IMG/VR virus record: IMGVR_UViG_3300042502_001233
Span: 1-64,000 of that record
Direction: 5' to 3' (one strand)
DNA length: 64,000 nucleotides
Shown here: piece by piece, positions 11,992-56,926 of the stretch
Layout of the letters: every line of letters starts with the position of its first letter
How positions within the stretch are numbered: the stretch's first letter is position 1
Translations under genes and position numbers: made by a program
The notes under the pieces: generated by a model
Databases searched by the model: none
What the model was told of the DNA's origin: nothing
What the model saw: the letters and a program-made list of their open reading frames with translations, nothing else

Positions 11992-12099
11992 ATGGGATAT
12001 GTATACCTTTTATTACAAATAGATTTTGATGGGAATGAATCCTACAAAATTGGTATTACCAAAAATGACCCAAATAAACGTGTAAAACAACTGCAAACT
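11992..12099 (+). pseudogene. orphaned 5' end of GIY-YIG/T5orf172-like gene
   Basis: MGYVYLLLQIDFDGNESYKIGITKNDPNKRVKQLQT, homologous to the start of 12948..13271. Confidence 0.85.
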
Positions 12100-12136
12100 T
12101 TTTCACAAATCGATATATTTATAATAAATTAAACAC

Positions 12137-12946
12137 ATGAAAAATTATATTTATATTTTGACAGACCCTATTACTAACGATGTTAGATATGTTGGTAAAA
12201 GTATTAACCCAGAAGTTAGAGTTAGAAAACATATTAGCGAAGCTAAAACTGGAAAAAGTAATAATCACAGAATTAATTGGATTAAATCTTTATTAAATAA
12301 AAACCTTAGACCTAACATAGAAATCATAGATGAAACTAACGACGATTGGGTTTTATTAGAAGAATATTGGATTAGTCAATTTACTACATGGGGTTTTAAT
12401 TTAGTTAACGGTACTGACGGTGGTGAAAACCCACCATCATGGAAAGGTAAAACCCATAGTGATGACTATAAAGAAATTAGACGACAAAAATTTTTAACAG
12501 ATAACCCATCTAAAAATATGAACGATAACTGGCGTAAAAATATTAGTTTATCTCATAAGAAAAATAATTTTTTACCAACAAAAGCTATTGAATCTAACAA
12601 AATTAAAGTAAACCAATTTACTTTGGAGGGTGAGTTTGTAAAAACTTGGAATTCGATAACTGAAGCTTCAAAATCGTTAAACTTAAAAAATATTTCTGGT
12701 ATTATTGACGTTTGTTTAGGGAAAAGGTTTAAATCTGCTAATTTTAGATGGTCATACACCGATAAATTACCTAATTATAGGACTAAAACTTTATCTGTTA
12801 AACAATACGATTTGAATGGTAATTTTATCAAAGAATGGGAATCAATTTCTATTGCTTCTAAAACATTAATAATAGATAGTTCTACTATTAGAAAAATTTG
12901 TAATGGTAGAGGTAAAACCGCTGGTGGTTTCAAATGGTCATATTAA
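12137..12946 (+). CDS. GIY-YIG homing endonuclease with NUMOD repeats
   Basis: YIYIL...RYVGKS...R...H; NUMOD1-like repeats. Confidence 0.9.
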   Translation: MKNYIYILTDPITNDVRYVGKSINPEVRVRKHISEAKTGKSNNHRINWIKSLLNKNLRPNIEIIDETNDDWVLLEEYWISQFTTWGFNLVNGTDGGENPPSWKGKTHSDDYKEIRRQKFLTDNPSKNMNDNWRKNISLSHKKNNFLPTKAIESNKIKVNQFTLEGEFVKTWNSITEASKSLNLKNISGIIDVCLGKRFKSANFRWSYTDKLPNYRTKTLSVKQYDLNGNFIKEWESISIASKTLIIDSSTIRKICNGRGKTAGGFKWSY

Positions 12947-12947
12947 A

Positions 12948-13271
12948 ATGGGATACGTGTATTTATTACTTTCAATCGACCCTAATGGTGAAGAGACTTA
13001 TAAAATAGGTATAACTAAAAGGGATATAAAAATTAGAATATCCGAATTGCAAACTGGTAACCCAAATAAAATTAGTCTACATAGAAAATATGAATCTAAA
13101 AACTATTTGAAAGTTGAACGATGGTTGCATAGAAAATATCAAATCAAAACCGAAGCTAAAAATGAATGGAGAACACTTACTGATGAGCAAGTATTCTCCT
13201 TTCTAGATGACTGTAAAACAGCCGATGATAATATACAATTTTTGTTAGACAACAACAGTTTCTTCGAATAA
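12948..13271 (+). CDS. GIY-YIG/T5orf172-like protein
   Basis: YVYLL..YKIGIT..R...LQTGNP...E..LH...NEW. Confidence 0.8.
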   Translation: MGYVYLLLSIDPNGEETYKIGITKRDIKIRISELQTGNPNKISLHRKYESKNYLKVERWLHRKYQIKTEAKNEWRTLTDEQVFSFLDDCKTADDNIQFLLDNNSFFE

Positions 13272-13763
13272 AACTTTATACATATCCAAGAACTCTTTCT
13301 TGGCTCTTGCATGGTCCCAACATTCAAACTCATCATTTTCATTTACAACTAAATTTTCCCATTCATATAACAACATTTCACGGTCAATTGCATGAACATT
13401 ATCAGACAATGGAAACTCAAATTCAAATTTCTCAGCTATTTTAGTCATTAAATTACCTTCATACATTTTGTAATCTGGTAGTTTGGCTTTTATAGGGGTT
13501 GGAATATCTAACATATACGCTTCGCTACCGTCATGTAGCAATGCAGCTTTTTTGTCTTCTAAACTAGTTGCCCTCATAGCGCACATGACGCTATGTTGAG
13601 CTACTGAATAGTGTTGATTCAAATGTCCCCCGAATCTTGGTAATGAAGCTAGCGCATGGGCTATGTCTTCAATTTGTATCATCTCCAATGTTGGTTCAAA
13701 TACGTTCATATAGATACCAGAATTTGTTCTGATACTATCTTTTGGTGCGTCAAATATATTCAT
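13245..13763 (-). CDS. HD-domain 5'-deoxynucleotidase (YfbR/YfdR-like)
   Basis: IEDIAHALA..RFGGH...YSVAQHS, LLHDGSEAY. Confidence 0.85.
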   Translation of the reverse strand: MNIFDAPKDSIRTNSGIYMNVFEPTLEMIQIEDIAHALASLPRFGGHLNQHYSVAQHSVMCAMRATSLEDKKAALLHDGSEAYMLDIPTPIKAKLPDYKMYEGNLMTKIAEKFEFEFPLSDNVHAIDREMLLYEWENLVVNENDEFECWDHARAKKEFLDMYKVLFEETVVV

Positions 13764-13769
13764 ATTATA

Positions 13770-16493: not shown

Positions 16494-17219
16494 TTATGCT
16501 AACCTAAGTGGTTTCAAAAACTCTCTTAAGAAAGCATTCTTTGGGCCACCAATCTTTTCAACCCATTTTTGATAGTTGGCTTCGTTTCTTTCTTCCAACT
16601 CAACCTCAACTTTTTTGGATGGTTTGCGAACACCGTATGGTAGTTTTTCTTCCTGAAAATCTGGATACAATTCTCTGTTGAATACTCTCTCGTCAACCAA
16701 GAAAACAAAAGCTGTTAATTGGTCACCCAAATCTGGTTCAAAAAAGATACCTACTTTAACACCCATTTCAGTAATTTGTTTAAGATGTTTATTTAAAGTA
16801 CCCAATCTTTCTCTATTTCTATTTGTTGTACCACCATTAAGGATGATAAACGTTTTGTCTTCTTTAGCCCACTTATTGTATATTTTTTGCATTGGTTCAA
16901 GACCCAACGTATTTTGTTGATATTCTACAACAGCATGACCAAATTGGATACCAGCGTGTATTGTACCGCATAATTGATATGCAACTAAACCATACATACG
17001 ATACTCTAAATATTTATCTGTTTTTCGTTGTAAAGAATTTGATTTAACTTTACATTTACTTAAATGTTTAATAAACTCATCTTTAGTTATTTTTTTCTCA
17101 AAAAAATATTCTTCGGGGGTTAATTGTAAATCTGAATACCATTCACCCACATCTAAAACTCTAATATTACTATTTATACACCAGTTATACGAAGTATTTA
17201 TATTGTTATCATTTTCCAT
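16494..17219 (-). CDS. peptidyl-tRNA hydrolase 2-like protein with N-terminal extension
   Basis: IQFGHAV..W..TFIIL..FFEPDLGDQLTA; similar to 43940..44290. Confidence 0.6.
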   Translation of the reverse strand: MENDNNINTSYNWCINSNIRVLDVGEWYSDLQLTPEEYFFEKKITKDEFIKHLSKCKVKSNSLQRKTDKYLEYRMYGLVAYQLCGTIHAGIQFGHAVVEYQQNTLGLEPMQKIYNKWAKEDKTFIILNGGTTNRNRERLGTLNKHLKQITEMGVKVGIFFEPDLGDQLTAFVFLVDERVFNRELYPDFQEEKLPYGVRKPSKKVEVELEERNEANYQKWVEKIGGPKNAFLREFLKPLRLA

Positions 17220-17965
17220 CCTATTGTATTTTTTGCGTTTATTCTATTACCAATTATTTCTTTATCACTTATAAAAATATTTTGATTGTTTTTTAATACA
17301 TGGTATTGTAATTTATTAATCTTACAAAATTCTTGTAATTTTTTAGCACCTAATATTTTATATTCATCTTTGTTAGGTGAGATTAATAAATAAGTTTTAA
17401 CGTCAGACCTAATCACTGAATTGTTTGAACCTTTTCTTTTTTTACCATTTTCAATTATCTTTTTACGACCTTCATCTGTTAATTTTATTAAACCATTTTT
17501 ATGTAAAATTTTAACAGATTCTTTTTGTTTTAAACTTGTTGTTTTTCCATACATTGGGTTCTTCTCACCTTTTTTAGCTTCGCTTAATTTTTTTCTTGAT
17601 TGTTCGGTTCTTTTATAACCAGCTTCACCACCTTCAGTCATATTACACAATGTACCAGTTTCAATATCAATTCTACCAATTAAATCGATTAATATTTTTT
17701 CATAAACTAAAGATTCATTTTCTGTTATTGATTCGATTAGTTTATATCTAATAGGTTCAAAACCATCGTTTAAAATTTTTCTTAATTTATTATAAAATAA
17801 ACTATTTTTATTTTTATTAATATTAATTAAATGATGATTTATCCTATTTCTAGTTCCTTTACCAATGTACATTGGTTCATAATTAAACTTATATTTACCA
17901 TACACGTATTCACCCTTTTTTCTTGGGTCTAAATAAACATAAACATAGTATTTCTTTTCTTCCAT
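17198..17965 (-). CDS. GIY-YIG homing endonuclease with NUMOD3
   Basis: YYVYVYLDP...YIGKG..R...H; NMTEGG; GEKNPMYG. Confidence 0.88.
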   Translation of the reverse strand: MEEKKYYVYVYLDPRKKGEYVYGKYKFNYEPMYIGKGTRNRINHHLININKNKNSLFYNKLRKILNDGFEPIRYKLIESITENESLVYEKILIDLIGRIDIETGTLCNMTEGGEAGYKRTEQSRKKLSEAKKGEKNPMYGKTTSLKQKESVKILHKNGLIKLTDEGRKKIIENGKKRKGSNNSVIRSDVKTYLLISPNKDEYKILGAKKLQEFCKINKLQYHVLKNNQNIFISDKEIIGNRINAKNTIGWKMITI

Positions 17966-29391: not shown

Positions 29392-29544
29392 ATGAAGAAT
29401 AAATATAAAACGAAAACAAAAGTAAATTATTCTATTAATTCCGAAATAGTTAATAGTTTTAATGATTTAGCTGATAAAAAATCAGTTAATAAATCAAAAT
29501 TAATAGGTCAATTAATACAAAAATGGATAAATGAAAACTTATAA
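29392..29544 (+). CDS. small ribbon-helix-helix-like protein
   Basis: KVNYSI...NKSKLI..LI; similar to ORFs at 49280, 49493, 54207, 54421. Confidence 0.65.
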   Translation: MKNKYKTKTKVNYSINSEIVNSFNDLADKKSVNKSKLIGQLIQKWINENL

Positions 29545-30169: not shown

Positions 30170-30420
30170 ATGATTCTATGTTTAATCATTGACGTATCTA
30201 TCCCAGCTTTATTTGCCTTTTCGATAAGTTCTTTAAGCACACATTTACCAACCTCAGTTATTTCTTTAGCTTTATCCATATCATATAACGTATAACCACG
30301 TTCTAATGCGGAAATTTTAACTTTTTCACTAATTGTTAGTTTATCATTGTGGTTATCCTTTCTAGACACCCCAAGTATTAAACCTTCTTCGTTAATCAAT
30401 ACTACTTGTGCTGTTATCAT
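30166..30420 (-). pseudogene. orphaned 5' end of Nudix gene fused to unrelated tail
   Basis: QVVLINEEGLILGVSRKDNHND nearly identical to start of 28670..29311. Confidence 0.8.
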
Positions 30421-36113: not shown

Positions 36114-36120
36114 AATTTAG

Positions 36121-36207: not shown

Positions 36208-36216
36208 ATGTATTTC

Positions 36217-44473: not shown

Positions 44474-44686
44474 CTAACTTTTTTTCAAAAATTTTCCAAG
44501 TCTTAAAACTTTCTCTTTAAATTCCTCAAAAGTTCCGTTGTTTTCAATGATGATATCAGCACATGTTTTGTCAATATCAAACGATGATGGGTCTTCCAAC
44601 GGAAGTCTTTCAGACGCATCAACCCAAATGATTATATCAAATAAACCTTGTCTCATACACTCGTTGATTTCAGCTCTATCTCGCAT
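44474..44686 (-). pseudogene. 3' half of interrupted dNMP kinase-like gene
   Basis: continues 50297..50590 at YVG|MRD; IIWVDA, ADIIIENNG. Confidence 0.75.
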
Positions 44687-45302
44687 CTAAAGATAATTCA
44701 ATAATTAAATCGTTAACAACTTTTTTTAACGCTTTAATGTCTTTTTTATCATTATAAATAACTTTACTAAAGTTAGTATAATCATCTAGATTAGTTTCTG
44801 AGATATGGTTTAAATCACGTAAGCTGTTCTCTCTAACACCCATTGGGTCGCCTTCCAGTCGAATTAAATAACCACCTTCTTTAAGGATATAGTCAGCTTC
44901 ATTAACAAATCTAACATCTGGTATCACAATAATTTTACCATTATTTAACTTAGTATCTAATTCTTCATTAAAGAATGATTTAACCCAAATATCAGTATCA
45001 TAATTATCTCTAAATAAATCAGTACCAACTAATTGTAATGTTTCACCAATAGTTTTATCAAATTGTTTAATAACTATATTTTTTTGGTCTTGAGTATAAT
45101 TACGAATCTCATTGCAGAATGGTTTATTAGCTTCATGAGTTGTCGTCATACGTATACCACTAATTATTTCCGTAATTAACCTTAATTTATCAGCCAATGC
45201 ATGTCTTTCTACTTTACCATGTAATTGCTCAGCTAATAATTCAGCAAAGGTATCTTTACCACTACCTATTTTTCCACTAATACCTATAATTTTTTTTTTC
45301 AT
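44676..45302 (-). CDS. deoxynucleoside monophosphate kinase (element-borne replacement)
   Basis: GISGKIGSGKDT, LQ.VGT..R, DVRF.NE, HISE. Confidence 0.85.
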   Translation of the reverse strand: MKKKIIGISGKIGSGKDTFAELLAEQLHGKVERHALADKLRLITEIISGIRMTTTHEANKPFCNEIRNYTQDQKNIVIKQFDKTIGETLQLVGTDLFRDNYDTDIWVKSFFNEELDTKLNNGKIIVIPDVRFVNEADYILKEGGYLIRLEGDPMGVRENSLRDLNHISETNLDDYTNFSKVIYNDKKDIKALKKVVNDLIIELSLDAR

Positions 45303-45305
45303 ATT

Positions 45306-48300
45306 TTACATTTTAAATGCTGTAACATAAATAAATTTATCACTTTCTCTTAAAACCAAGTTATCAAAACCTATTTCTAAAAGTATTCTTTTAAATTCAT
45401 CTTCATTATCTTTCCATTGATTGGCTGTTTCTGCAATCATGATTGGTTGCATAGTTCTCAATACTCTGTAAGCTTCTTTTAAATAATCTTCATAATTGCT
45501 ACCCATAAGTGATAAACTAAAAACAACAACATCTATAGATTCATCGTCTAAAGGTAATTTTGAAATATCACAAGCTATTACTGAATCATCAATGGCTACG
45601 TGGTCAAATGATAACACTTTGTTGGGTATTTCAGTTTTTAAAAGGTTTTCACCACATCCAAAATCACCAACAATATAATCTTTACGTTTAATTTGTTTAG
45701 CGATTTCTTTATATGGTATTTCTGACCAAGTTTTTCTAGCTTCACGATACAAAGTATGATACTGATACCACTCAGTTGGGTCCTCGGTTAATCGTTTGTT
45801 AGTTGTAATAGAATTTGATACACCCCAGCGTTTATTCATTTGACTGAACTCACCATATTTAGGTAGGTTATGATTAACATAATTTGGATTCAAAGGTATT
45901 TTAAATTCTTCTCTATCAAACGTGATAATCTCACCGTTGTTTAAACGATTAACCCATTCGGCCAACTCTTGTTGTGCTTCAAACACTAATCGTTCTCTTG
46001 AAGGTAGGAGATTTCTAGGAACACGCCCATCAATTGCTAAATCACCCAAAGTTGCTTTAAATCTAATTATATTATGTCTACGTCTGTCCCAACTCCAAAT
46101 ATGTTCGCCAGCTGGTATAATAACTTGTGGAATATAAATGTTAACTTTATCAAATTTAGAACCTTGTCTATTAACACGACCAACTAATTGGTCATATTCA
46201 GAACTGGTCCATGGAAGTACTATTGGTATCAATGTGTCACACACATATTGAATACCGTCTACACCAGTACCAACTGGTGCCGAACCAATTAAAACATCTA
46301 ATTTACCCTTTTTAAAAGCTTCTAAACCACTTTTATCGTCACCAGTATAAAATCCTATACTAAAACCTAAATCTTTTACGAATTTACCTATAATATCGGT
46401 TAATTCAGTAACATAATATGTGTATATTAAAGTCCCCCTTTTTATTTTATCTTTAACAGAATCAAGTTTAGTATTAATTAAAACTTTTTCGAACTCGCTA
46501 ACAGCACCTTTAGGTATTGCTATGATTTCATTAAACAAATGACTACCATCAGATTCTATGATTTCTTCGTTAACTGAAATACCATAATTAGGTTTATAAC
46601 GAAGACCATATCTTGTTAATGCTTTATACATTTCAATACCATTTACAATGTTTTCTTTGGTTTCTAATTCGTTATGAGATTCACCTGTTAACAATTCAAT
46701 TAATTTTTTAGGTTCTGTTAAATTGTTAATAATTGGTGTTGCCGACATAGCCATAACTAATAAATTTTCATTATCTTCTTTAGAGTTTATTATTAGTTTT
46801 TTAACAACATTCCTTCTAATAGATTCTTCGTTATCACGCTGCTTAACATTTTGAACTTCATCTAAAATTATGTAATCAATCTGATTATATTTTAACAATT
46901 CAGAAACAATATATTCACCATCTTCTAACTGAAACGTTTCATAATTTAATACTAAATAATTATAAACATTTTCTTTTAATTTTATGTTATGTTTATGAAC
47001 TAAATTATAATTAGAATTAACACCTTCTAATTCTTTCTTAACGTAAATCTGATTGTTAGTGAAATATTCATTTATGGACTCAACCCAGCCCTCAACAGTT
47101 GCATTATTACAAATTATTATAGTGTTTTTAGCACCAGCTAACCTACCAGCAAATATTGCAGATAAAGTTTTACCAGCACCAGTTCCAGACCAGTTACCGT
47201 ATTTTTTCTCTTTAATTAAACGATAACTAATTAGTTTTTGCATTAAGTTTGGCTGATGTTGAAAAATGTAATCACTTGGGGCGACTATTTTACAAACTTC
47301 TTCGTATTCACTAAAAAACCAGTCTTTAATTATTGTAAACCTTTCACCACCAGTTTCACCTCTTAAAGTATCAACATCTATTTGATTGTTAAGAACTTTA
47401 TTCCACAATTTTTTTAATTGATTCTTTAACAAGAAATCAATATTTTCATCATCCAAAGAAGCGGTAACCATTGTATTATCATACATATGTAATTCTTTAA
47501 TTGGGTCTAAAGGTGCTAATGACTCTGGTTCTTCTTCAGTAATTTCATCAACATTACCCTCAACTAAATCAACTTCTAAATTAGTTGGTTCGTTTAGAAT
47601 AGAATCATTGTTGGTGTCATCGTCAGACTCATCGTTTTCTAACGTATCTAATATATCGTGAATTAATCTTTCTCTTTCCTCCGAACCAGCTTCAGAAGAA
47701 GTTAAAGAATCTAATGACCCTATTTGTTGTATTTTTTTAGCGAGATTGTTTGAATTTATTATGGTTATTAGTTCAACTGAGTCCATATAAATTAAATCTT
47801 TTTCTAAAGATTTAATAAAGTCTAACATATAACGTTTATTCCAATAGTGACCATCACCTAAAGAACCTAACCAATCACCCATAGAAACCCACCCAGAATA
47901 TTTGTATGTTTTTTCTGGCATTGCTGGGATGTTGTCTGGTTTTTTTATGTTTTTCCATTCACTATAAGATTTAAGACCTAAAGTTCTAGCATATTCTCTA
48001 GCTTCTTCAAATGGTAAAAACTCCCTAAAATTTGATAACTTACCATGACCTAACCAATCACTCCAAGATACCCAACCAGATTCTTTATAAACTTGAGATG
48101 GTGATGCTGGAATTTCATCTGGTTTAGCTGAAGATTTAGAAAACAACCTCCATTCTTTTTCACCAGTTAATTTTAAACTTCTAGCATATTCTCTAGCTTC
48201 TTCAAATGGTAGATAATCTCTTTTGTTACATGATATGTAATTAGTTCCTAACCAATCACCCAGCGACACCCAACCAGAATCTTTATAAACCCTATCTGGG

Positions 48301-49202
48301 GCACTAGGTATATTATTTGGTCTTAATTCAGATTTAATAAATTCAACCCATTCCTTTTGTCGGGTTATATTTAATTTTCTAACATATTCTCTAGCCTCTT
48401 CAAACTGTAAAAATTTTTTATCAAAATTTGATAACTTACCGTGACCTAACCAATCAACCCAAGATACCCAACCAGAATCTTTATATGTTTTATTTGGTGA
48501 TTTAGGAATTTTAACATCATAATCGGTAGATTTTAAATATGTTCTAAACTCATTAGTGTTATTTAATTTTAAATTATGTATTATTTTCCTAGCTTCTTTA
48601 AAATCATAAAACTCATCAAAATCTTTTTTATAACCTAAAAAATCACCCCAAGATTTCCACCCATAATTTTTATACATTACGTGAGGTGAATAAGGTAAAC
48701 CATTCACATTTGTTTTGTTTAAATATTCATGATATTTAGTTTGTGATGTTAAACCTAAAATTTTAACTACGTTTTTGGCCTCTTCAAAGGATAAATAATT
48801 TCTATTTTTTAAAGCAACGTAATTAGTTCCTAACCAATCACCCAGCGACACCCAACCAGAATCTTTATATATTTTATCTGGCGATGTAGGTATGTTGTGA
48901 GGCCTTAATTCAGACTTATAAAAATTTTTCCAATCTTGTTGTGTTTTTAATCCTAAACTCTTAACAAAATTTTTAGCAATTTCAAAAGGTAGGTAACCGT
49001 CTTTTAGATTCACCGATGAACATTTAGTTTTATTTAACAAAGCATATGGTGTTATTAAATGTTCTGTATTAAACTTTTTATCAATAACCACCACTTTTTG
49101 GTTAGTATTGACATATTCGACTTTGGAATAATCATAATTATCGTTCCAATTACCACTATCTCTTAATTTTTGTAAAAACTCTTTTGTTTTATCAGTCATC
49201 AT
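45306..49202 (-). CDS. repeat-containing SF2 helicase fused to SAM methyltransferase
   Basis: 6 repeats PFEEAR...GWVSWGDWLG; GTGAGKT, DEVQ, SAT; DFGCGE, FSLSLMG. Confidence 0.8.
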   Translation of the reverse strand: MMTDKTKEFLQKLRDSGNWNDNYDYSKVEYVNTNQKVVVIDKKFNTEHLITPYALLNKTKCSSVNLKDGYLPFEIAKNFVKSLGLKTQQDWKNFYKSELRPHNIPTSPDKIYKDSGWVSLGDWLGTNYVALKNRNYLSFEEAKNVVKILGLTSQTKYHEYLNKTNVNGLPYSPHVMYKNYGWKSWGDFLGYKKDFDEFYDFKEARKIIHNLKLNNTNEFRTYLKSTDYDVKIPKSPNKTYKDSGWVSWVDWLGHGKLSNFDKKFLQFEEAREYVRKLNITRQKEWVEFIKSELRPNNIPSAPDRVYKDSGWVSLGDWLGTNYISCNKRDYLPFEEAREYARSLKLTGEKEWRLFSKSSAKPDEIPASPSQVYKESGWVSWSDWLGHGKLSNFREFLPFEEAREYARTLGLKSYSEWKNIKKPDNIPAMPEKTYKYSGWVSMGDWLGSLGDGHYWNKRYMLDFIKSLEKDLIYMDSVELITIINSNNLAKKIQQIGSLDSLTSSEAGSEERERLIHDILDTLENDESDDDTNNDSILNEPTNLEVDLVEGNVDEITEEEPESLAPLDPIKELHMYDNTMVTASLDDENIDFLLKNQLKKLWNKVLNNQIDVDTLRGETGGERFTIIKDWFFSEYEEVCKIVAPSDYIFQHQPNLMQKLISYRLIKEKKYGNWSGTGAGKTLSAIFAGRLAGAKNTIIICNNATVEGWVESINEYFTNNQIYVKKELEGVNSNYNLVHKHNIKLKENVYNYLVLNYETFQLEDGEYIVSELLKYNQIDYIILDEVQNVKQRDNEESIRRNVVKKLIINSKEDNENLLVMAMSATPIINNLTEPKKLIELLTGESHNELETKENIVNGIEMYKALTRYGLRYKPNYGISVNEEIIESDGSHLFNEIIAIPKGAVSEFEKVLINTKLDSVKDKIKRGTLIYTYYVTELTDIIGKFVKDLGFSIGFYTGDDKSGLEAFKKGKLDVLIGSAPVGTGVDGIQYVCDTLIPIVLPWTSSEYDQLVGRVNRQGSKFDKVNIYIPQVIIPAGEHIWSWDRRRHNIIRFKATLGDLAIDGRVPRNLLPSRERLVFEAQQELAEWVNRLNNGEIITFDREEFKIPLNPNYVNHNLPKYGEFSQMNKRWGVSNSITTNKRLTEDPTEWYQYHTLYREARKTWSEIPYKEIAKQIKRKDYIVGDFGCGENLLKTEIPNKVLSFDHVAIDDSVIACDISKLPLDDESIDVVVFSLSLMGSNYEDYLKEAYRVLRTMQPIMIAETANQWKDNEDEFKRILLEIGFDNLVLRESDKFIYVTAFKM

Positions 49203-49492: not shown

Positions 49493-49654
49493 ATGGGAAG
49501 AAAAGCAAAAATACAAGAAGAAAAGAAAGATAAAATTAGTATCTCTATCTCAAAAGAAAACTACGAAGCAATGGCTTCAGAAGGTATCAATAAGTCACAA
49601 CTAATCAATTGGTTGTTAGAACAACACTTTAATTTATTAAATTATGGAAAGTAA
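49493..49654 (+). CDS. small RHH-like protein
   Basis: MGRKAKIQEEKK...NKSQLINWLLEQHF; paralog of 54421..54588. Confidence 0.7.
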   Translation: MGRKAKIQEEKKDKISISISKENYEAMASEGINKSQLINWLLEQHFNLLNYGK

Positions 49655-50309
49655 AATTTGTAATACGTGTAATACTGAATTACCATTAGATAATTTTTCT
49701 AAAGACAATGCAACTAAAGATAAATTAAAAAATACATGTAAAAAATGTTCCTCAATTAAAAACGCTGAATGGAGAAAAAATAATAAAGAAAAAAGAAAAC
49801 AATACCATAAAGAATATCATAATAAAAATAAAGAAAAATTAAAAGAGTATAATAAAAAGATTAACAATGAATTTAAAAAAACACATGGTATATCTAGACA
49901 TACTTTATGGGATAGAGAGAATAAAGATAGACGTAAAGAATTATTGAAAATTAGACTAAAAAATCCAGTAGAGGCTTTAAAGTATAAATTAAGGAGTTCT
50001 TTAAATGCAATTTTTAGATATAACGGTTATACTAAAAAACATAAATCACACGATATTATAGGTTGTTCATATGAAGAATTTAAACAACACCTTGAATCTC
50101 AATTTGAACCTTGGATGAATTGGGATAATCGTGGGTTATATAATGGTGAGTTTAACTATGGTTGGGATATTGACCATATGGTACCATTATCAACGGCAAC
50201 AACTGAAGAAGAGTTAATTAATTTATGTCACTACACAAACACACAACCATTATGTAGTAAAGTTAATAGGGATATAAAGAAAAATAAAGTTGATTTTTAT
50301 CCAACATAA
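49644..50309 (+). CDS. HNH homing endonuclease
   Basis: WDIDHMVP...HYTNTQPLC..N. Confidence 0.85.
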   Translation: MESKICNTCNTELPLDNFSKDNATKDKLKNTCKKCSSIKNAEWRKNNKEKRKQYHKEYHNKNKEKLKEYNKKINNEFKKTHGISRHTLWDRENKDRRKELLKIRLKNPVEALKYKLRSSLNAIFRYNGYTKKHKSHDIIGCSYEEFKQHLESQFEPWMNWDNRGLYNGEFNYGWDIDHMVPLSTATTEEELINLCHYTNTQPLCSKVNRDIKKNKVDFYPT

Positions 50310-50590
50310 CAGTCAGAATGTTCCAAGATACCTTTGGCTAGTTTGGCTCTGTCATCTTTGTTGTAATCACAAATAAGTTCTTTCCATTCAGCTCTGTGGT
50401 TAACTCTATCCTCAAAACATTCTTCTGGTGTTGTATAACCATATTTGTCTTTAAGTGTGTTGTATAGAAATATATCAGCAGCGGCTTGTGATGATGATTT
50501 GAATGTTAACCCATAATTATCTCGCCATATTTCAGCTAACGTATCTTTCGCGTGGCGAGCGTGTCCGATTACCAGAATTTTTTTAAGCAT
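50297..50590 (-). pseudogene. 5' half of interrupted dNMP kinase-like gene
   Basis: P-loop GHARHAKDT; ends at the insertion junction. Confidence 0.75.
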
Positions 50591-51859: not shown

Positions 51860-52183
51860 TTATGATAGAAGTTCGATTCTTCCTCTGGATATATCTTTAA
51901 GACTTGCAGTCTTGTTGGTTATGTGGTCAACTACCACCCCATCCTTGACTCTGTACGTTCTTCGTTTGTCGCTTCTGTCACCTTTACCGATTTGTTCACG
52001 TCTCTCGTCAACGCTTTCTTGTATGTGACCAGTTCTGTAATATTCGTTCACACGCTTTTTAAGCTCTTTTAAGGCATCTTCTTTGTTCTGGTGTTGATTC
52101 CTTCCATCTCGAACTACTTTGAGCCCTGTGGCCGCGTGTGTGACTACTACACATGAATCTGTGGTATTTTTGTGCTGACCACC
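51860..52183 (-). pseudogene. orphaned 3' part of release factor gene starting at GGQ
   Basis: GGQHKNTTDSCVVVTH...KRRTYRVKD...IELLS homologous to the end of 55208..55891. Confidence 0.88.
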
Positions 52184-52186
52184 AAA

Positions 52187-52510
52187 TTAAACGGCACGAT
52201 ATTCATTAAGCATTTTTTTAATATATTCCCAACAAATATTTGCGTTTTTAAATTCAACATCACCAAATTGACATAATCTCGTGTATTCTTCATCAATTTC
52301 ATTGGAAAATTTAGTGCTATATTTTTTCACATCATCTTTTGATAATTCGTAAAAACTAGGTAAACCATTTTTAACTAAAATATTAGAAAACGCTTCAATT
52401 CTAGTATCTTTATCACCACTATAAAAATGGTCAATCATCTGACAACGACTAGAAATAAGTTCTTCAACTACTTCTAAAGCTTTTATTTTATTTTTAATAT
52501 CTTTTTTCAC
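52187..52510 (-). CDS. hypothetical cargo protein
   Basis: 107-aa ORF following the GHKL gene. Confidence 0.6.
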   Translation of the reverse strand: MKKDIKNKIKALEVVEELISSRCQMIDHFYSGDKDTRIEAFSNILVKNGLPSFYELSKDDVKKYSTKFSNEIDEEYTRLCQFGDVEFKNANICWEYIKKMLNEYRAV

Positions 52511-52512
52511 GA

Positions 52513-54051
52513 TTAATAAATTATAAATTTTCGTAACCTTTCACTAACTTTAATGAAATATTCGGTTAACATTATTTCTTTTTCAGTATCATTATAATAC
52601 TCAATATCAGCTAAAGCCAACCCTAATGAAGCTAATAACTTAAAAGCTACATCTTTAGTTTCAAAGTTAGTTTTACTCATAAATTTAGACCAAAAAGGAT
52701 GTTCTTGATTTATTTCTAAAATATATAGACCTTGTTCTTTAACCGTTTTAAACATCAAACCATTTTCACCTAATTTAATAAATCTATAATCAAAAAATTT
52801 ATCATCTCTGACTCTAGTTTGATTTGGTTTACTTCCTGGTTTAACCGTTTCTTTCTTTTCAACTGGTGTCTCACGTTTTGTGTTCATACCCCTTTCTTTT
52901 TTAATATCAATAAAACGGTTATTATTGATACTTTTAGTTGACTCATCTAACTCTTTTTTAACATCCTCAGTCAACTCTATATTCAATGTTTGGTCTTCTC
53001 TACTTCTGATTGTTTTAATATAAGGTTGGATAGCATTTCTACAAATATCTTTAAACCCTTGGTCAATATCATTTTTATCCTTTTCATGTATCATTTTATT
53101 GAAAGTTGACCCGAATAAGTCATCACCACTACCATTAACAAATAATTCAATTCTAACACCATTAGAATACCCATCACCTATTTTACCCACAATACCTAAA
53201 TCCAAACCAGCCCCAACTAAACGTTTATTTCTATAAATATAAAGGCCAGCATTACTACTATTTCTACCAATTTTTGTTGATAATGAAGTACTAACACCTT
53301 CTAAATTATAAACACTAAATTTAATTTCATTCTCACCATAAACTATTTTTTCATTTGATGTGAGACATTTGGAGTAAAATTCTTTACGAAACATTGGGTC
53401 GAAAGATTCAACTAACTCATCGTTAACAAATAATTTAACATTTAATTCATCAATAAAATATTTGAAATATAAACTAAGTTTACTTTTTAAAATATCTTTA
53501 AAAATAGAAGGGTTTGAATTTGATACTTTATCAAGTTTATATAATTTAATAATAGTACCTGTATCAGAACCAACGTCTTCTTTAAACGATTCTAATTCTT
53601 CTGGAGTACCAGTTCTAATAGGAATAATAAAAGTATTTTGGTCTAACAAAACCTCTAAATCATAAGTGGCAATATATAATGAACCATTTTCACTTTTTGT
53701 TATCACATCAAAAGCTTTACCGATAGATAAGGCAGCAGCTTTAAGACCAGTACCATATGAACCTAAATCGAACTCTCTGTTTTTACCAGTTAAAGCACCA
53801 AGTTTAAATGCTTCTTTTAACGTTTCTAAATCCATACCACAACCATCATCACAAATTTTAATGTGGTCATACTCATCTTTGATTTTCTTAATTGTAATTT
53901 TAACGTTTTTTGAGTTAACGTTTGTGTCTAGTGAATTATCAATAATATCAGCAATTGCCGCATAATTATTGTAACCAGAATTTCTTAAAGTCGCTAAGAA
54001 ATTGACATTTGGAGTTACATCCAAACCATTTGTTTCGTTTAATTTTTCCAT
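52513..54051 (-). CDS. MORC-like GHKL ATPase
   Basis: AIADIIDNSLD, DDGCGM, GSYGTGLK, GT. Confidence 0.85.
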   Translation of the reverse strand: MEKLNETNGLDVTPNVNFLATLRNSGYNNYAAIADIIDNSLDTNVNSKNVKITIKKIKDEYDHIKICDDGCGMDLETLKEAFKLGALTGKNREFDLGSYGTGLKAAALSIGKAFDVITKSENGSLYIATYDLEVLLDQNTFIIPIRTGTPEELESFKEDVGSDTGTIIKLYKLDKVSNSNPSIFKDILKSKLSLYFKYFIDELNVKLFVNDELVESFDPMFRKEFYSKCLTSNEKIVYGENEIKFSVYNLEGVSTSLSTKIGRNSSNAGLYIYRNKRLVGAGLDLGIVGKIGDGYSNGVRIELFVNGSGDDLFGSTFNKMIHEKDKNDIDQGFKDICRNAIQPYIKTIRSREDQTLNIELTEDVKKELDESTKSINNNRFIDIKKERGMNTKRETPVEKKETVKPGSKPNQTRVRDDKFFDYRFIKLGENGLMFKTVKEQGLYILEINQEHPFWSKFMSKTNFETKDVAFKLLASLGLALADIEYYNDTEKEIMLTEYFIKVSERLRKFIIY

Positions 54052-54420: not shown

Positions 54421-54588
54421 ATGGGAAGAAAAGCAAAACTACAAGAAGAGAAAAAAGGTAAACTATCAATCACCATCTCATCCGATAACTATGAAATACT
54501 AGTTAATGAAAACATCAATAAATCTAAATTAATCGATTGGTTATTAGAACAACATTTTAACTCTTTAAACAATGGGAAGGGTGCTTAA
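54421..54588 (+). CDS. small RHH-like protein
   Basis: MGRKAKLQEEKK...NKSKLIDWLLEQHF. Confidence 0.7.
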   Translation: MGRKAKLQEEKKGKLSITISSDNYEILVNENINKSKLIDWLLEQHFNSLNNGKGA

Positions 54589-55195
54589 TGATGAACAGAA
54601 AAAAGCTAGAGCTGAATACCAAAAAGCTTGGCGAGAAGCTAATAAAGAACGTTTAGCTGAATGGCATAGAGAATATAGAAAGAATAACCCAGAAAAGAAC
54701 AAAACCAACACTAAAGCGTATAGAGAGCGTCACCCAGAAAAAGCAAAAGAATCAACTAAAAAATATAAAGCGAATAATCAAGACAAAATTAAAGCTGCAT
54801 CAATAGTGTATAGAGGTAGAAAACTTGAATTACATAATATCAAAAAAGCTAATGACCCAGTGTATAATTTAAAATGTACTGTTAGAAGCGGTATATTAAA
54901 ATCTTTCTCCAGAATCAACGCTAAGAAAAACAATAAAACAGTTGAAATTCTAGGATGTTCTTATGAGTTTTTAAAAGAACATATTGAATCAAAATTTGAA
55001 CCATGGATGACTTGGGGCAACAAAGGTCTTTATAATGGTGAATTAAACTACGGTTGGGATGTAGACCACATCATACCACTGGATACAGCGGTGACCGAAG
55101 AAGATGTGATTAGACTTAACCATTATACCAACCTACAACCACTTTGTAGTAAAATCAATCGAGATATTAAAAAAAATAACCCTAGTTACTACTAG
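54572..55195 (+). CDS. HNH homing endonuclease
   Basis: WDVDHIIP...HYTNLQPLC; close paralog of 49644..50309. Confidence 0.85.
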   Translation: MGRVLNDEQKKARAEYQKAWREANKERLAEWHREYRKNNPEKNKTNTKAYRERHPEKAKESTKKYKANNQDKIKAASIVYRGRKLELHNIKKANDPVYNLKCTVRSGILKSFSRINAKKNNKTVEILGCSYEFLKEHIESKFEPWMTWGNKGLYNGELNYGWDVDHIIPLDTAVTEEDVIRLNHYTNLQPLCSKINRDIKKNNPSYY

Positions 55196-55207
55196 GGTTA
55201 TTTATTA

Positions 55208-55891
55208 TTATGAAAGAAGCTCTATTTTACCTCTTAATATGTCTTTTAGACTAGCAGTCTTATTAGTGATATGGTCTACAACCATATCATCCTTTACACG
55301 ATAAGTCCTTCTTTTATCGGCACGACCACCTTCACCAATTTGTTCATTACGGTTTTCAATGGTTAATGAATCATGACCTGTTTTATAAAAGTTATTAACC
55401 CTTTGAGTTAATTCAGCAATCGCTGCTTCTTTATTTTGGTGTTGACTTCGACTATCACGTCTAACTTTAATCCCAGTTGCTATATGAGTTACAACAACAC
55501 ATGATTCAGTTTTATTCCTTTTTTGCCCACCGTTCCCAGTTCCTCTGGTTGTTTCCAAACGATATTCACTAGGATGTAATTCTACTTCCTTATAATCGTT
55601 TTCTTCCATAAGTGCTACGGTGATTGAACTTGTATGAACCCTACCTTTTCTTTCGGTTGGTGGTACTCTTTGCCACCTATGTGAACCTACATGGTTTAAG
55701 AACACATTTTTAACATTATATCCAGATATTCAGATAGTTATCATACCATCTTTCTCATCAATAACTTTAGCTTCAAATGAATAATTTTTGCAAGCTTTTA
55801 AAAAAATATCTCGCATATCTTTAATTAATAATTTTGAATCATCACCGCCTTCTGACGCTCTTAATTCTAATAAAATTTTATTTGTTTTCAT
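55208..55891 (-). CDS. class I peptide chain release factor-like protein (no domain 1) with in-frame TGA at codon 54
   Basis: LELRASEGG..., HRWQRVPPTERKGRVHTS, GGQ; frame continuous across TGA 55730-55732. Confidence 0.85.
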
Positions 55892-56669
55892 TGTATTTTG
55901 GTCTATTTAAATTGCCTTCATATATAACACCGTTTATTTCCCTTGTTGTTCCCCACATTGGTCTAAGATTCGATAAAGCGTTTACCACACTGGCTGGAGT
56001 TTCTGGTGGAAAACTAATAATTTGTTTTATATGGTCTATGTGCCATTCTCCATAATTATCCCATGTCATTCCGTCAGTAAATAAGTTTGTGATATGTTCT
56101 TTAAATTCTAAAGCTGAATAGCCTAACATATCTATGGTCTTACCAGTTTTTTTGTTATGTAAATCACGTAGCGAATTTTTTAATATTCGCCTCCAAGCTA
56201 TTACGTGTGGGTTTTTTTGATTATATAATTTAGCGTTTTCTTTTATTTTTTCTTTATTATTTTTTCTATATTCTTTACCGTAAGCTGATTTTTTTTCACG
56301 ATTATCTATTAAATATTGTTTGTCATACGCTTTTTTCTTTTCTTTATTTAACGCAACGTATTCTTTATTTTTTTGTTTAACATATTCAATATTTTCTTTA
56401 CGATATTCTTTTTGATAATTATTTCGTTTATCTTTATTTTCCAAACGGTGGTTAATAAAATACTCATTTAACTTTTCTTTATTCTTTTCCCTATACTTTG
56501 CATCGAGTAACTTCTTTTTTTGTAAAGAAACATCACTATGGATTTTCACATCAGGATATAACTCCCTTAACTGTTTAACCGTTAAATTGTGTGATTTTAA
56601 ATGTTTGGTCGATAATGAAGATAAATCTTTTCCACATACTGGACAAGTTACAAATGAAGATGGTTCCAT
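55878..56669 (-). CDS. HNH homing endonuclease
   Basis: CPVC..HL..H, K/E repeats, WHIDHI...NLRPMW..N. Confidence 0.85.
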   Translation of the reverse strand: MEPSSFVTCPVCGKDLSSLSTKHLKSHNLTVKQLRELYPDVKIHSDVSLQKKKLLDAKYREKNKEKLNEYFINHRLENKDKRNNYQKEYRKENIEYVKQKNKEYVALNKEKKKAYDKQYLIDNREKKSAYGKEYRKNNKEKIKENAKLYNQKNPHVIAWRRILKNSLRDLHNKKTGKTIDMLGYSALEFKEHITNLFTDGMTWDNYGEWHIDHIKQIISFPPETPASVVNALSNLRPMWGTTREINGVIYEGNLNRPKYNENK

Positions 56670-56731
56670 AATATTCTTTTATAATAAATATCACAAATAA
56701 TTAAAAAAACCACAAATGGCAAAGAATTCCA

Positions 56732-56926
56732 TTCGTTCTTAAAGATTTCTTTTGCGTTTTTACCCGTTAGTCAGATGCTAACAAATCCTAACCTATCTTC
56801 GGTTATTATTCAGTCGATGTTATTGTTCTTCGCTGTTTTAATGTAAATGTCGCGCATTTCACAAACCAACAGCTTCGCATCGGTTCCACCTTCTGCGTCT
56901 CGGATTTCTAAATTAATTTTTCCCAT
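56732..56926 (-). pseudogene. orphaned original 5' part of release factor gene (two in-frame TGA)
   Basis: MGKINLEIRDAEGGTDAK...ID*II...FVSI*LTGKNAKEIFKNE. Confidence 0.85.

What the first reader, a model, noticed from the sequence alone, without database searches (positions are those of the whole stretch)
11992..56926. Self-repairing homing elements: free-standing endonucleases that bring a replacement piece of the gene they disrupt
At least six insertions leave an orphan fragment plus a diverged replacement: T5orf172-like (5' end), Pth2-like (5'), Nudix (5'), RF (5' and, separately, 3' at GGQ) and dNMP kinase (whole gene). Junctions lie at conserved motifs. Both GIY-YIG and HNH enzymes do it. 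Similar partial-duplication homing is known from fungal mitochondria and T-even intronless homing, but this density in one phage region is notable. The diverged patch probably also confers immunity to cleavage.
Basis: partly seen in the sequence, partly recalled or inferred. Interest (0 to 1): 0.72.

Follow-up and report, generated by a model that had tools for sequence, protein, structure and literature searches.

The report
Homing endonucleases carrying replacement gene pieces
In this 362-kb lake-water phage, selfish endonuclease genes sit inside conserved genes and carry a spare copy of the part they cut off, so the gene still works and the old piece is left beside it as a stump.

Summary

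- **GIY-YIG genes.** Three separate an orphan 5' fragment from an intact gene with a diverged 5' end: T5orf172, PTH2-like and Nudix.
- **HNH genes.** Three paralogous genes do the same at the 5' end and at the GGQ motif of a short release-factor gene. The third splits a small kinase gene cleanly with a 5.6-kb island that carries a whole dNMP kinase.
- **Relatives.** They show empty sites with uninterrupted genes, whose sequence matches the orphans better than the patches.
- **Best single proof.** A second phage shares a block of about 1.1 kb (endonuclease plus 5' patch) at 96-100% identity, while the flanks are only 60-78% identical.
- **Footprint of loss.** One relative keeps the orphan and the patched gene but has lost the endonuclease.

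The likely mechanism is ordinary double-strand-break homing. The orphan serves as one homology arm, and "endonuclease plus patch" behaves like an intron that needs no splicing. Immunity conferred by the patch fits the two allele classes seen in several cases, but it is untested.

The principle is known from fungal mitochondria and T4 genetics. I found no report of it in phage genomes. Two SegB-like endonucleases that each carry a second tRNA, and a split-intein "fractured" RNA ligase, extend the theme.

The parts
11989..12132 (+). Case A: orphan 5' fragment of the T5orf172 gene. Homology runs to 12096 (junction after CAAACT, LQT|GNP); the ORF runs on to a stop at 12132.
   Evidence: It is 92% aa identical to the intact gene of empty-site relative L034.
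12137..12946 (+). Case A: free-standing GIY-YIG + NUMOD1/3 homing endonuclease gene. Its stop overlaps the start of the patched gene.
   Evidence: PF01541, PF07453, PF22083. Absent in L034, L036 and L037; diverged homologues sit at the same site in L035 and L038.
12945..13271 (+). Case A: functional T5orf172/MUG113 gene. Its first 108 nt (12945-13052) are the diverged replacement patch.
   Evidence: PF13455, PF10544
18007..18288 (-). Case B: orphan 5' fragment (93-aa ORF) of the PTH2-like gene. Homology ends at about 18026.
   Evidence: It is 94% aa identical to the N-terminus of the intact gene in empty-site relative L025.
17198..17965 (-). Case B: GIY-YIG (LEM-3-like) + NUMOD3 homing endonuclease gene.
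   Evidence: It is 96% aa identical in L018.
16494..17219 (-). Case B: PTH2-like hydrolase gene. Positions 16956-17219 are the class II replacement patch.
   Evidence: phrog_3668. Paralogue 43943-44281 matches PF01981. The identity block shared with L018 ends at about 16955.
30166..30420 (-). Case C: orphan Nudix 5' fragment. Homology covers 30343-30420 plus the native upstream region. The ORF then runs antisense into the endonuclease's 3' flank.
   Evidence: It is contiguous with L005 up to the junction.
29531..30169 (+). Case C: GIY-YIG + NUMOD1 homing endonuclease gene, on the strand opposite to the target gene.
   Evidence: Absent from 15 related loci. About 0.92 kb containing it is deleted in L006.
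28670..29311 (-). Case C: Nudix hydrolase gene. Positions 29223-29311 duplicate the orphan. The 5' ~150 nt are only 60-78% identical to L003, against 85-100% further downstream.
   Evidence: PF00293
56745..56974 (-). Case D1: orphan native 5' end of the release-factor gene, with its native upstream hairpin. It has two in-frame TGA codons, as in the intact gene of L040.
55878..56669 (-). Case D1: HNH-type endonuclease gene with an N-terminal Ros/MucR-like zinc finger. Its 3' end overlaps the release-factor start.
   Evidence: HNH motif WxIDHI...N...NLxP in alignment A5. Paralogues match phrog_1035. Absent in L027.
55208..55891 (-). Short class-I release factor (domains 2-4, PPT and GGQ motifs, in-frame TGA at 55730-55732). 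It is a chimera of a foreign 5' patch (55691-55891), a native middle and a foreign 3' patch (55208-55522).
   Evidence: PF00472, PF03462
54572..55195 (+). Case D2: HNH-type endonuclease gene, convergent with the release factor. It has a 330-bp leader (54242-54571) shared with the paralogue at 49321-49651.
52187..54051 (-). Case D2: cargo of the island. It holds a HATPase_c_3 gene (52513-54051) and a 107-aa ORF (52187-52510) that ends in a TAA directly before the orphan.
   Evidence: No counterpart in L027.
51860..52186 (-). Case D2: orphan native 3' end of the release-factor gene, from GGQ to the stop. It is 86% aa identical to L027, against 77% for the patch.
50297..50590 (-). Case D3: N-terminal half (97 aa, P-loop) of a 166-aa kinase-like gene, ending ...DCYVG followed by a stop.
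   Evidence: L027 ORF 7449-7949 is this half plus the C-half, uninterrupted.
49644..50309 (+). Case D3: HNH/EndoVII-like endonuclease gene abutting the N-half.
   Evidence: phrog_1035, 6.7e-15
44676..49202 (-). Case D3: island cargo. It holds a 1298-aa SNF2 helicase-methyltransferase gene (45306-49202) and a complete dNMP kinase gene (44676-45302), the whole-gene substitute.
   Evidence: PF21448, PF00176, PF05148
44474..44686 (-). Case D3: C-terminal half (70 aa, starting at the native Met98, MRDR...) of the split kinase-like gene.
36120..36982 (-). Case E1: tRNA-His (36908-36982), SegB-like GIY-YIG endonuclease gene (36217-36849), and a degenerate 89-nt tRNA-His-like sequence (36120-36208).
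   Evidence: (phrog_314, 6.6e-36). The 89-nt copy falls below the Rfam threshold.
57057..57943 (-). Case E2: tRNA-Met (57870-57943), SegB-like endonuclease gene (57153-57812), and an 89-nt variant tRNA-Met with an expanded variable region (57057-57145). Endonuclease plus variant tRNA is an insertion relative to L027.
   Evidence: 53 bits
24855..27379 (-). Related theme: a 'fractured' RNA ligase 1 gene. The order is N-extein + N-intein (26777-27379), Vsr/DUF559-like endonuclease ORF (25802-26719), then C-intein + C-extein (24855-25805).
   Evidence: The arrangement matches that described in PMC2677866.

Best explanation
Each element is a mobile cassette made of a free-standing homing endonuclease gene plus the adjoining piece of its target gene. 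That piece comes from a different, presumably cleavage-resistant, allele class.

Shown:
- The cassette sits inside the coding sequence of a conserved gene, at a conserved motif.
- The resident piece of the gene is pushed aside and stays as an orphan.
- The cassette's own piece is joined in frame to the rest of the resident gene, so a full-length chimeric gene remains.

Inferred:
- The endonuclease cuts cassette-free alleles at or near the junction.
- The break is repaired from a cassette-bearing genome during co-infection. The recipient's own 5' (or 3') part pairs with the donor's orphan, and the remainder pairs with the donor's gene. 'Endonuclease + patch' is therefore copied in exactly as an intron would be, but neutrality comes from duplication rather than splicing.
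- The first such structure probably arose when an endonuclease sitting next to its target gene homed into a genome that shared homology on the gene side only, and the other end was joined illegitimately. This is the one-sided double-strand-break repair shown experimentally in T4.
- Later the endonuclease can be deleted, leaving orphan plus patched gene.
- Larger versions carry cargo genes, including a whole substitute gene, or a second tRNA.
For: Paired copies with an endonuclease between them occur at six sites.

Empty sites exist in relatives, each with one uninterrupted gene:
- L005, L004 and L007 for Nudix.
- L025, L019 and L022-24 for the PTH2-like gene.
- L034, L036 and L037 for T5orf172.
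- L027 for both ends of the release factor, the kinase gene and the tRNA-Met cassette.

Orphans are the native allele. The left flank and orphan are contiguous with L005 or L025 at 86-100% identity, and the match stops at the junction.

The cassette moves as a unit. Between the window and L018, the stretch from about 18060 to 16955 is 96-100% identical; it covers the end of the orphan, the endonuclease and the 264-nt patch. Both flanks are 54-78% identical.

The release-factor gene is a foreign/native/foreign chimera with breakpoints at the two junctions.

A footprint of endonuclease loss exists. L006 keeps the orphan, 85 bp of cassette and the patched gene, with a deletion of about 0.92 kb at an AAA microhomology.

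Patch-type alleles occur naturally in endonuclease-free genomes: class II in L019 and GGQKRNKTES in L028. They differ from the target class right at the junction, including a 3-nt indel.

In case A two diverged endonucleases (57% identity) carry reciprocal orphan-end and patch allele types.

Catalytic motifs are intact.

One-sided illegitimate repair and co-conversion are established for T4 homing (PMC2988022).
Against: - No cleavage site has been determined, so 'junction = cut site' and 'patch = immune allele' remain inferences.
- In the Nudix case the patched gene is identical to a presumed target (L005) from -22 to +38 around the junction. Immunity there would have to come from more distant differences.
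- No donor-type genome (endonuclease beside an intact target gene, no orphan) was found for any case.
- The DNMK|C-half junction occurs in L040 without the endonuclease, the N-half or the SNF2 gene. That island may therefore have been built in several steps.
- Flanking tRNAs of the SegB-like family share an anticodon in only about 5 of 17 related loci.
Confidence: 0.75

Rival explanations
1. The partial duplications come from general mosaic recombination between diverged phages, with illegitimate joins inside homologous genes. The endonuclease genes are passengers that happen to lie at module boundaries and did not make the breaks.
For: The region is a fine-scale mosaic. Left and right flanks of the Nudix site resemble different relatives, L005 and L003. 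Endonuclease genes are known to lie at recombination boundaries in other phages (PMC10448857). The DNMK|C-half junction exists without an endonuclease in L040.
Against: All five local partial duplications of protein genes in the window have an endonuclease gene exactly between the copies. The block shared with L018 has its limits at the junction and at the end of the patch, not at random points. The same junction nucleotide is used in independent lineages with diverged endonucleases. Junctions fall in conserved motifs, as expected of endonuclease targets.
Confidence: 0.12
2. A tandem partial duplication arose first and one copy decayed. Endonuclease genes later inserted into the spacer between the copies, so the L006-like state would be ancestral.
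For: L006 has orphan plus patched Nudix gene with no endonuclease between them.
Against: The two copies are not decayed duplicates of one another. They belong to different natural allele classes: the orphan resembles the local relatives and the patch resembles distant ones. L006 retains 85 bp that in the window form the endonuclease's 3' flank, and the missing segment is bounded by a microhomology, as for a deletion. Six independent tandem duplications, each later hit by an endonuclease, is unparsimonious.
Confidence: 0.06
3. The orphans are retained because they have a function of their own, for example as truncated regulatory or decoy peptides. This would add to, not replace, the homing explanation.
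For: Orphans A, B, C and D1 keep the native promoter region, start codon and open frame up to the junction. The two halves of the split kinase are both intact ORFs, and the C-half is conserved in L040.
Against: Orphan D2 has no start codon, and a stop codon stands directly before it. The downstream tRNA-His copy falls below the Rfam threshold. Under the homing model, orphans are needed only as homology arms.
Confidence: 0.1
4. Metagenome assembly artefact that joins strain variants.
For: The record is a metagenome-assembled genome from lake water.
Against: The same structures appear in independent contigs from other samples (L018, L035, L038, L006, L026, L051-L059). Contigs from runs of other years bridge the D junctions with zero differences.
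Confidence: 0.01

Closest known systems
Endonuclease-linked partial gene duplications in fungal mitochondria. Examples: the Allomyces atp6 hybrid gene with a foreign C-terminus and endonuclease ORF (Paquin, Laforest and Lang 1994, from my own knowledge), and C-terminal duplications of atp6 and cob flanked by GIY-YIG/LAGLIDADG ORFs (PMC6279837).
   Same: A free-standing endonuclease ORF lies between a functional gene with a foreign terminal piece and the displaced resident piece, which persists as a fragment.
   Different: Those cases are in organelles, mostly involve the 3' end, and are single cases per genome. Here the host is a phage, mostly 5' ends are replaced (with translational coupling of endonuclease and patched gene), and both ends of one gene are replaced independently. 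Empty, occupied and endonuclease-lost states are all seen among relatives.
Intronless homing and marker exclusion by T4 SegF, SegG, SegE and SegB (reviewed in PMC2988022).
   Same: A free-standing GIY-YIG gene sits next to its target gene, cuts the allele of a related phage, and is copied in together with flanking sequence (co-conversion).
   Different: In T-even phages the endonuclease is intergenic in both partners and no orphan fragment is left. Here the insertion point lies inside the coding sequence and a duplicated piece restores the gene.
[quoted passage not shown]
   Same: Homology on one side only, and a microhomology join on the other. This gives the proposed origin of the orphan+patch structure.
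   Different: That was a laboratory construct with an intron. Natural products of this pathway in phage genomes have not, to my knowledge, been catalogued.
Genes in pieces: mobE in nrdA of phage Aeh1, mobA in T4 gene 39/60, and seg in gene 43 (PMC2988022). Also the mobA + 50-nt bypass cassette (Bonocora et al. 2011, from my own knowledge).
   Same: The split kinase-like gene (97-aa and 70-aa halves, no loss and no duplication) is of this type. The idea that a cassette carries sequence protecting the target from cleavage is shared with the bypass element.
   Different: The island here also brings a complete non-orthologous dNMP kinase. The other five cases are duplications, not splits.
HEG islands at boundaries of genetic exchange (Barth, Dunham and Seed 2023, PMC10448857), and SegB-tRNA association and amplification (Chihara et al. 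2026, PMC13096335).
   Same: Endonuclease genes with cargo lie at recombination boundaries (HATPase; SNF2/methyltransferase + DNMK). SegB-like genes are embedded in tRNA arrays (17 of 26 related loci).
   Different: A search of the first paper's text for duplication, truncation, remnant and partial found no description of orphan-plus-patch pairs. Here the tRNA cassettes carry a structurally variant tRNA of the same anticodon rather than amplified identical copies.
Fractured genes: split inteins with a free-standing Vsr-like endonuclease between the halves (Dassa et al. 2009, PMC2677866).
   Same: The RNA ligase at 24855-27379 has this architecture.
   Different: That is a splicing-based solution. 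The main finding is a duplication-based solution to the same problem, in the same genome.

Membership tests
Free-standing GIY-YIG homing endonucleases (Seg-like) | GIY-YIG catalytic domain joined to NUMOD-type DNA-binding modules | tested here: met
   PF01541/PF22945 with PF07453/PF07460/PF22083 for 12137-12946, 17198-17965 and 29531-30169. phrog_314 'homing endonuclease' at E about 1e-36 for 36217-36849 and 57153-57812.
Free-standing GIY-YIG homing endonucleases (Seg-like) | Not embedded in an intron or intein | tested here: met
   Rfam finds only tRNAs and a tmRNA in the window, no group I or II intron. The ORFs have their own starts and stops.
Free-standing GIY-YIG homing endonucleases (Seg-like) | Presence/absence polymorphism at the same locus among related genomes | tested here: met
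Free-standing GIY-YIG homing endonucleases (Seg-like) | Site-specific cleavage of the endonuclease-free allele and preferential inheritance in mixed infection | not testable with these tools
   This needs enzyme assays or crosses. Only the junctions and allele classes are known.
HNH (beta-beta-alpha-Me) free-standing homing endonucleases (Mob-like / EndoVII-motif) | HNH catalytic motif | tested here: met
   W-x-(I/V)-D-H ... N ... N-(L/T)-x-P ... N is conserved in the three paralogues (alignment A5). phrog_1035 'endonuclease VII' at 6.7e-15 and 2.1e-7. There is no Pfam hit to an HNH family and no PDB relative, so the assignment rests on the motif and PHROG.
HNH (beta-beta-alpha-Me) free-standing homing endonucleases (Mob-like / EndoVII-motif) | Presence/absence polymorphism | tested here: met
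   L027 lacks all three copies and has intact release-factor and kinase genes. Eight further paralogues lie elsewhere in the genome.
Partial-duplication endonuclease insertion (Allomyces atp6 type) | The functional gene is a chimera of a resident part and a foreign terminal piece joined in frame | tested here: met
   Identity profiles against endonuclease-free relatives.
Partial-duplication endonuclease insertion (Allomyces atp6 type) | The displaced resident piece persists next to the endonuclease ORF | tested here: met
Genes in pieces (mobE/nrdA type) | The endonuclease insertion splits one gene into two ORFs with no duplication or loss | tested here: met
   True only for the kinase-like gene, split at YVG|MRD. 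Not met for cases A-D2, which are duplications.
Group I intron- or intein-borne homing | A self-splicing RNA or protein element surrounds the endonuclease | tested here: not met
   No intron models matched. There are no Hint/intein domains in cases A-D. The exception is the separate RNA ligase split intein.
SegB-like tRNA-associated endonucleases | Homologues embedded in phage tRNA arrays | tested here: met
   17 of 26 representative related loci have a tRNA within 400 bp. The usual spacing is about 50-58 nt after one tRNA and 8-16 nt before the next. The association was published in PMC13096335.

The most novel reading that the evidence does not exclude
Duplication-buffered homing may be a general third way, beside introns and inteins, for endonuclease genes to colonise conserved coding sequence in large phages. 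In it the orphan is the functional homology arm of the element, and the patch is an immune allele. Endonuclease variants and allele classes would then chase each other. Case A hints at this: two endonucleases only 57% identical carry reciprocal orphan-end and patch allele types. The same logic would extend to tRNA genes (endonuclease plus a variant tRNA with an expanded variable region) and to whole-gene substitutes with cargo. That would make these cassettes a main route by which auxiliary genes, and their alleles, are exchanged among uncultivated jumbo phages.
Probability: 0.4. Interest if true: 0.75.

Novelty: new variant of a known kind. Interest (0 to 1): 0.62.

Why it matters
Homing endonucleases do best when they target conserved coding sequence, but inserting there normally kills the gene unless an intron or intein splices the insert out. 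These cassettes show a splicing-free solution in a phage, with all life-cycle stages visible among natural relatives: empty site, occupied site, endonuclease lost.

They also give precise and testable predictions of target sites and of resistant alleles for six uncharacterised endonucleases.

They explain how chimeric alleles and cargo genes spread between diverged jumbo phages. The cargo here includes a HATPase gene, an SNF2-methyltransferase gene, a dNMP kinase and variant tRNAs.

For annotation, short ORFs next to endonuclease genes in phage genomes should be checked as gene stumps before being called new genes.

Tried and rejected
1. **Alternative genetic code.** The window has a tRNA with anticodon CUA and an in-frame TGA in the release-factor gene. 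However, coverage by long ORFs is 0.82 under code 11, against 0.85 with TGA or TAG read as sense, and 0.93-0.99 in the structural region. Stops of long ORFs are TAA 237, TAG 22, TGA 21, and there is no excess of TGA-joined ORF pairs. The genome uses the standard code, so no other code was applied.

2. **Similarity between the DNMK gene and the 70-aa ORF downstream.** There is none and no Pfam hit. The case was resolved only when L027 showed that the 70-aa ORF and the 97-aa ORF 5.6 kb away are two halves of one gene.

3. **Search for donor-type contexts.** Relatives of the Nudix-site endonuclease: none found. Relatives of the PTH2-site endonuclease: only L018 again, plus distant homologues in unrelated contexts.

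4. **Sequence search of solved structures with two of the three HNH paralogues (the D1 and D3 genes).** No usable match.

5. **Contigs of four lake metagenomes laid on 51801-57800, to look for cassette-free variants.** The contigs confirm the junctions. The few 'joints' have only 21-22 letters on one side and are not evidence of variants.

6. **Megablast against GenBank phages.** Only tRNA-sized matches, so no isolate is closely related.

7. **Structure and complex prediction.** Not used, because they would not bear on the claim.

Full report
**Context**

The window is the first 64 kb of a 362,018-bp virus record rated complete. It comes from lake-water metagenomes and recurs in several lakes and years.
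- GC content is about 31%, and genes lie almost all on the minus strand.
- The closest isolates are distant. The DNA ligase is 53% identical to that of Cellulophaga phage phi4:1, and megablast finds only tRNA-sized matches. A Bacteroidota host is my inference.
- The region encodes RNA-repair and translation-maintenance functions: RNA ligases, a polynucleotide kinase/phosphodiesterase-like protein, a CCA-adding enzyme, two PTH2-like hydrolases, a short release factor, 32 tRNAs and a tmRNA. It also encodes Nudix, DNA ligase, PARP-like and ART-like proteins.
- The genome uses the standard code.

**The observation**

In every case an endonuclease gene lies between the copies.

Three cases involve GIY-YIG/NUMOD enzymes, with the orphan at the 5' end:
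- T5orf172: orphan 11989-12096, endonuclease 12137-12946, gene 12945-13271.
- PTH2-like: orphan 18007-18288, endonuclease 17198-17965, gene 16494-17219.
- Nudix: orphan 30343-30420, endonuclease 29531-30169 on the other strand, gene 28670-29311.

Three paralogous genes with an HNH motif (phrog_1035 for two of them) account for the rest:
- Release-factor 5' end: orphan 56745-56974, endonuclease 55878-56669.
- Release-factor 3' end from GGQ: orphan 51860-52186, endonuclease 54572-55195, with a HATPase gene and a 107-aa ORF as cargo.
- The kinase case (below).

Junctions fall at LQT|GNP, IQQ|GIQFGHA, RKDNHND|FGLIGG (just before the Nudix box), FxNE|VGxHRWQRVPPTE and GGQ.

**The dNMP-kinase case**

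This case turned out differently from a duplication.
- The 70-aa ORF after the DNMK gene shows no similarity to DNMK.
- It does match the C-terminus of a family of proteins of about 166 aa, which has a weak DNMK-like P-loop.
- Relative L027 has one 166-aa gene. It equals the window's 97-aa ORF (50297-50590, 73% identity) joined to the 70-aa ORF (44474-44686, 71%).
- The split falls exactly between G97 and M98, with nothing lost or duplicated.
- The 5.6 kb between the halves holds the third HNH gene, a 1298-aa SNF2-methyltransferase gene and a complete DNMK (PF21448).

L040 has release factor, DNMK and C-half, but no N-half, endonuclease or SNF2 gene. The DNMK|C-half join is therefore older or separable, and the endonuclease's role in making it is not shown.

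**Insertion-free relatives**

| Site | Empty in | Identity of orphan vs patched region to the intact relative |
|---|---|---|
| Nudix | L005, L004, L007 | L005 flanking genes 98-99% aa; left-arm nt alignment (86% overall) ends at the junction |
| PTH2-like | L025, L019-L024 | L025 upstream genes 98% aa; intact N-terminus 94% identical to the orphan |
| T5orf172 | L034, L036, L037 | orphan 92% vs patched gene 78% (L034) |
| Release factor 5' / 3' | L027 | 5': orphan 67% vs patch 41%; 3': orphan 86% vs patch 77% |

The window's release-factor gene, profiled against L027, has three parts:
- 33-57% identity up to 55691;
- 67-90% in the middle;
- about 64% after GGQ.

It is thus a chimera with two independently replaced ends. 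The Nudix gene is 85-100% identical to its closest endonuclease-free relative L003, except for the first ~150 nt, which are 60-78% identical.

**The cassette moves as a unit**

L018 comes from another sample and has the same orphan-endonuclease-gene arrangement at the PTH2-like gene.
- Between L018 and the window, identity is 96-100% from about 18060 to 16955. That stretch covers the last few tens of bp of the orphan, the endonuclease and exactly the 264-nt patch.
- Identity is 54-78% on both sides.

Each genome therefore keeps its own native orphan and 3' part, and both share a recently transferred 'endonuclease + patch'.

That is the pattern expected if the element homes by ordinary two-sided repair. 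The recipient's 5' part pairs with the donor's orphan, and its 3' part pairs with the donor's gene. The orphan then serves as the element's homology arm, and the cassette is the equivalent of an intron whose harmlessness comes from duplication.

At the T5orf172 site, L035 and L038 carry diverged endonucleases (57% and 72% identity). In L035, where the orphan is on the contig, the junction is at the same nucleotide as in the window.

**Loss of the endonuclease**

L006 has the Nudix orphan, 85 bp that in the window form the endonuclease's 3' flank, and the patched gene. It lacks about 0.92 kb containing the endonuclease ORF, and the ends meet at an AAA microhomology. This is the degenerate stage of the homing cycle. 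It argues against the idea that a tandem duplication came first.

**Immunity of the patch**

The patches are not decayed copies of the orphans. They belong to a second natural allele class.
- PTH2-like gene: class I (VPYNL-SPIQQ) is found in the orphans and in L025, L022 and L024. Class II (VAYQLxGTIHA, with a 3-nt indel at the junction) is found in the patches and in the endonuclease-free L019.
- Release-factor 3' end: the patch type GGQKRNKTES occurs natively in the distant L028, while orphan and L027 have GGQHKNTTDS.
- T5orf172 site: the window and L038 have patch ...RISELQT, and the window's orphan end is ...RVKQLQT, the type of all empty sites. L035, with the 57%-identical endonuclease, has the reverse. 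This hints at reciprocal specificities.
- Nudix gene: the 22 nt before the junction are identical in patch and native allele.

Resistance is therefore plausible, is not uniform across cases, and is untested.

**Origin of the first cassette**

A free-standing endonuclease next to its target gene could home into a genome that shares only the gene. It would then need an illegitimate join on the other side. Such one-sided repair with microhomology joins was shown for T4 (summarised in PMC2988022). I found no donor-type context (endonuclease beside an intact target, no orphan) for any of the six cases, so this step remains inference.

**Extensions of the theme**

- Two SegB-like GIY-YIG paralogues (51% identical; phrog_314) each sit between a canonical tRNA and an 89-nt copy with the same anticodon: His at 36120-36982 and Met at 57057-57943.
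- L027 has the canonical tRNA-Met followed directly by the release-factor upstream region. 'Endonuclease + variant tRNA-Met' is therefore an insertion.
- The variant tRNA-Met scores 53 bits in Rfam. The tRNA-His copy falls below threshold.
- The family lives in tRNA arrays in 17 of 26 related loci, with matching anticodons on both sides in about five. The tRNA association is published (PMC13096335).
- The RNA ligase at 24855-27379 is a split-intein 'fractured gene' with a Vsr-like endonuclease, as described in PMC2677866.
- About 28 endonuclease-like ORFs occur genome-wide, 12 of them in this window. Nearly all orphan/patch pairs lie in the window.

**Artefact check**

Independent contigs from other samples share each arrangement. 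Contigs of lake metagenomes from other years bridge the D junctions with no differences.

**Comparison with what is known**

- The principle matches endonuclease-linked terminal duplications in fungal mitochondria (PMC6279837; Allomyces atp6, from my own knowledge) and T-even intronless homing with co-conversion (PMC2988022).
- The cargo-bearing versions fit the 'HEG island' idea (PMC10448857).
- Phage reviews describe endonuclease insertions into genes only as genes in pieces.
- My searches found no description of orphan-plus-patch cassettes in phages.

I therefore rate this a new variant of a known kind. It is not a new mechanism, but it is a well-resolved natural series with clear experimental predictions.

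Noticed in passing
window 55730-55732 and 56773/56812; L027:5900-6010; L028:5880-5960; L040:2280-2460: The short release-factor gene carries conserved recoding signals. The window has an in-frame TGA (ATC TGA) in both patch and orphan, and the orphan has a second TGA. The intact gene of L040 has two in-frame TGAs. L027 needs a +1 frameshift at CTT TAG C, and L028 one at GGAGGGGT CTT TGA C, the classical prfB-type site. The protein has a PPT (RF1-like) motif. This suggests prfB-like autoregulation in phage release factors, in several versions.
   Followed up: partly
window 6502-6668, 35765-35930, 36120-36982, 57057-57943, 9967-10053; genome 355791-357705: Many tRNA species occur twice. Often one copy is canonical (74-75 nt) and one is an 85-89-nt variant with an expanded variable region (Asp, Ile, His, Met; also Val, Thr, Pro). 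These isotypes normally have short variable loops. Variable loops are targets of a tRNA-cutting defence (Septu, PMC13096335), so the variants might be resistant versions. Not tested.
   Followed up: partly
window 58850-59227 (-): A full-length tmRNA gene (Rfam RF00023, 63 bits) lies in the phage, next to the release-factor/tRNA region.
   Followed up: no
window 44350-44423 (-) and 5320-5393 (-): A tRNA with anticodon CUA (amber suppressor type) is present, and a tRNA-like gene that ARAGORN reads with a four-base anticodon. The genome as a whole is not recoded.
   Followed up: partly
window 24855-27379 (-): An RNA ligase 1 gene is broken into N-extein+N-intein and C-intein+C-extein ORFs, with a Vsr/DUF559-like endonuclease ORF between them (a 'fractured gene'). 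A paralogous endonuclease lies at 40798-41673, and others lie elsewhere in the genome.
   Followed up: partly
window 16062-16463 (-): A 133-aa ORF matches only positions 148-195 of the Gp23 major capsid protein family (E 5.8e-14). It is conserved at the same place in seven related loci. It may be a capsid-fragment decoy or a remnant.
   Followed up: no
window 43943-44281 (-): A second PTH2 gene (PF01981) has no ATG/GTG in the expected position. A stop codon lies two codons after an upstream ATG, and the only listed start is an internal TTG.
   Followed up: no
window 7584-7653, 10592-10703, 38003-38107, 54112-54181, 58355-58424, 1496-1549, 59274-59327: A family of intergenic repeats of about 55-110 bp, 77-86% identical, is scattered through the window. 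One copy sits at the inner edge of the D2 island.
   Followed up: no
window 45306-49202 (-), repeats 47851-48926: The cargo gene is a 1298-aa fusion of an SNF2-type helicase and a methyltransferase. Its N-terminal third contains tandem repeats of about 190 bp.
   Followed up: no
window 18509-19798 (-) and 33067-33999 (-): Two ADP-ribosyltransferase-like genes (PARP catalytic domain; ART-PolyVal) lie among the RNA-repair genes.
   Followed up: no
genome 95248-99753 (-), 143660-150330 (+), 153533-159797 (-): Further local partial duplications lie outside the window. Examples are the C-terminal 179 aa of a 1139-aa protein repeated in the next ORF at 49% identity, and a 470-aa duplication at 57% identity next to a Vsr-like ORF. 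None was examined.
   Followed up: no
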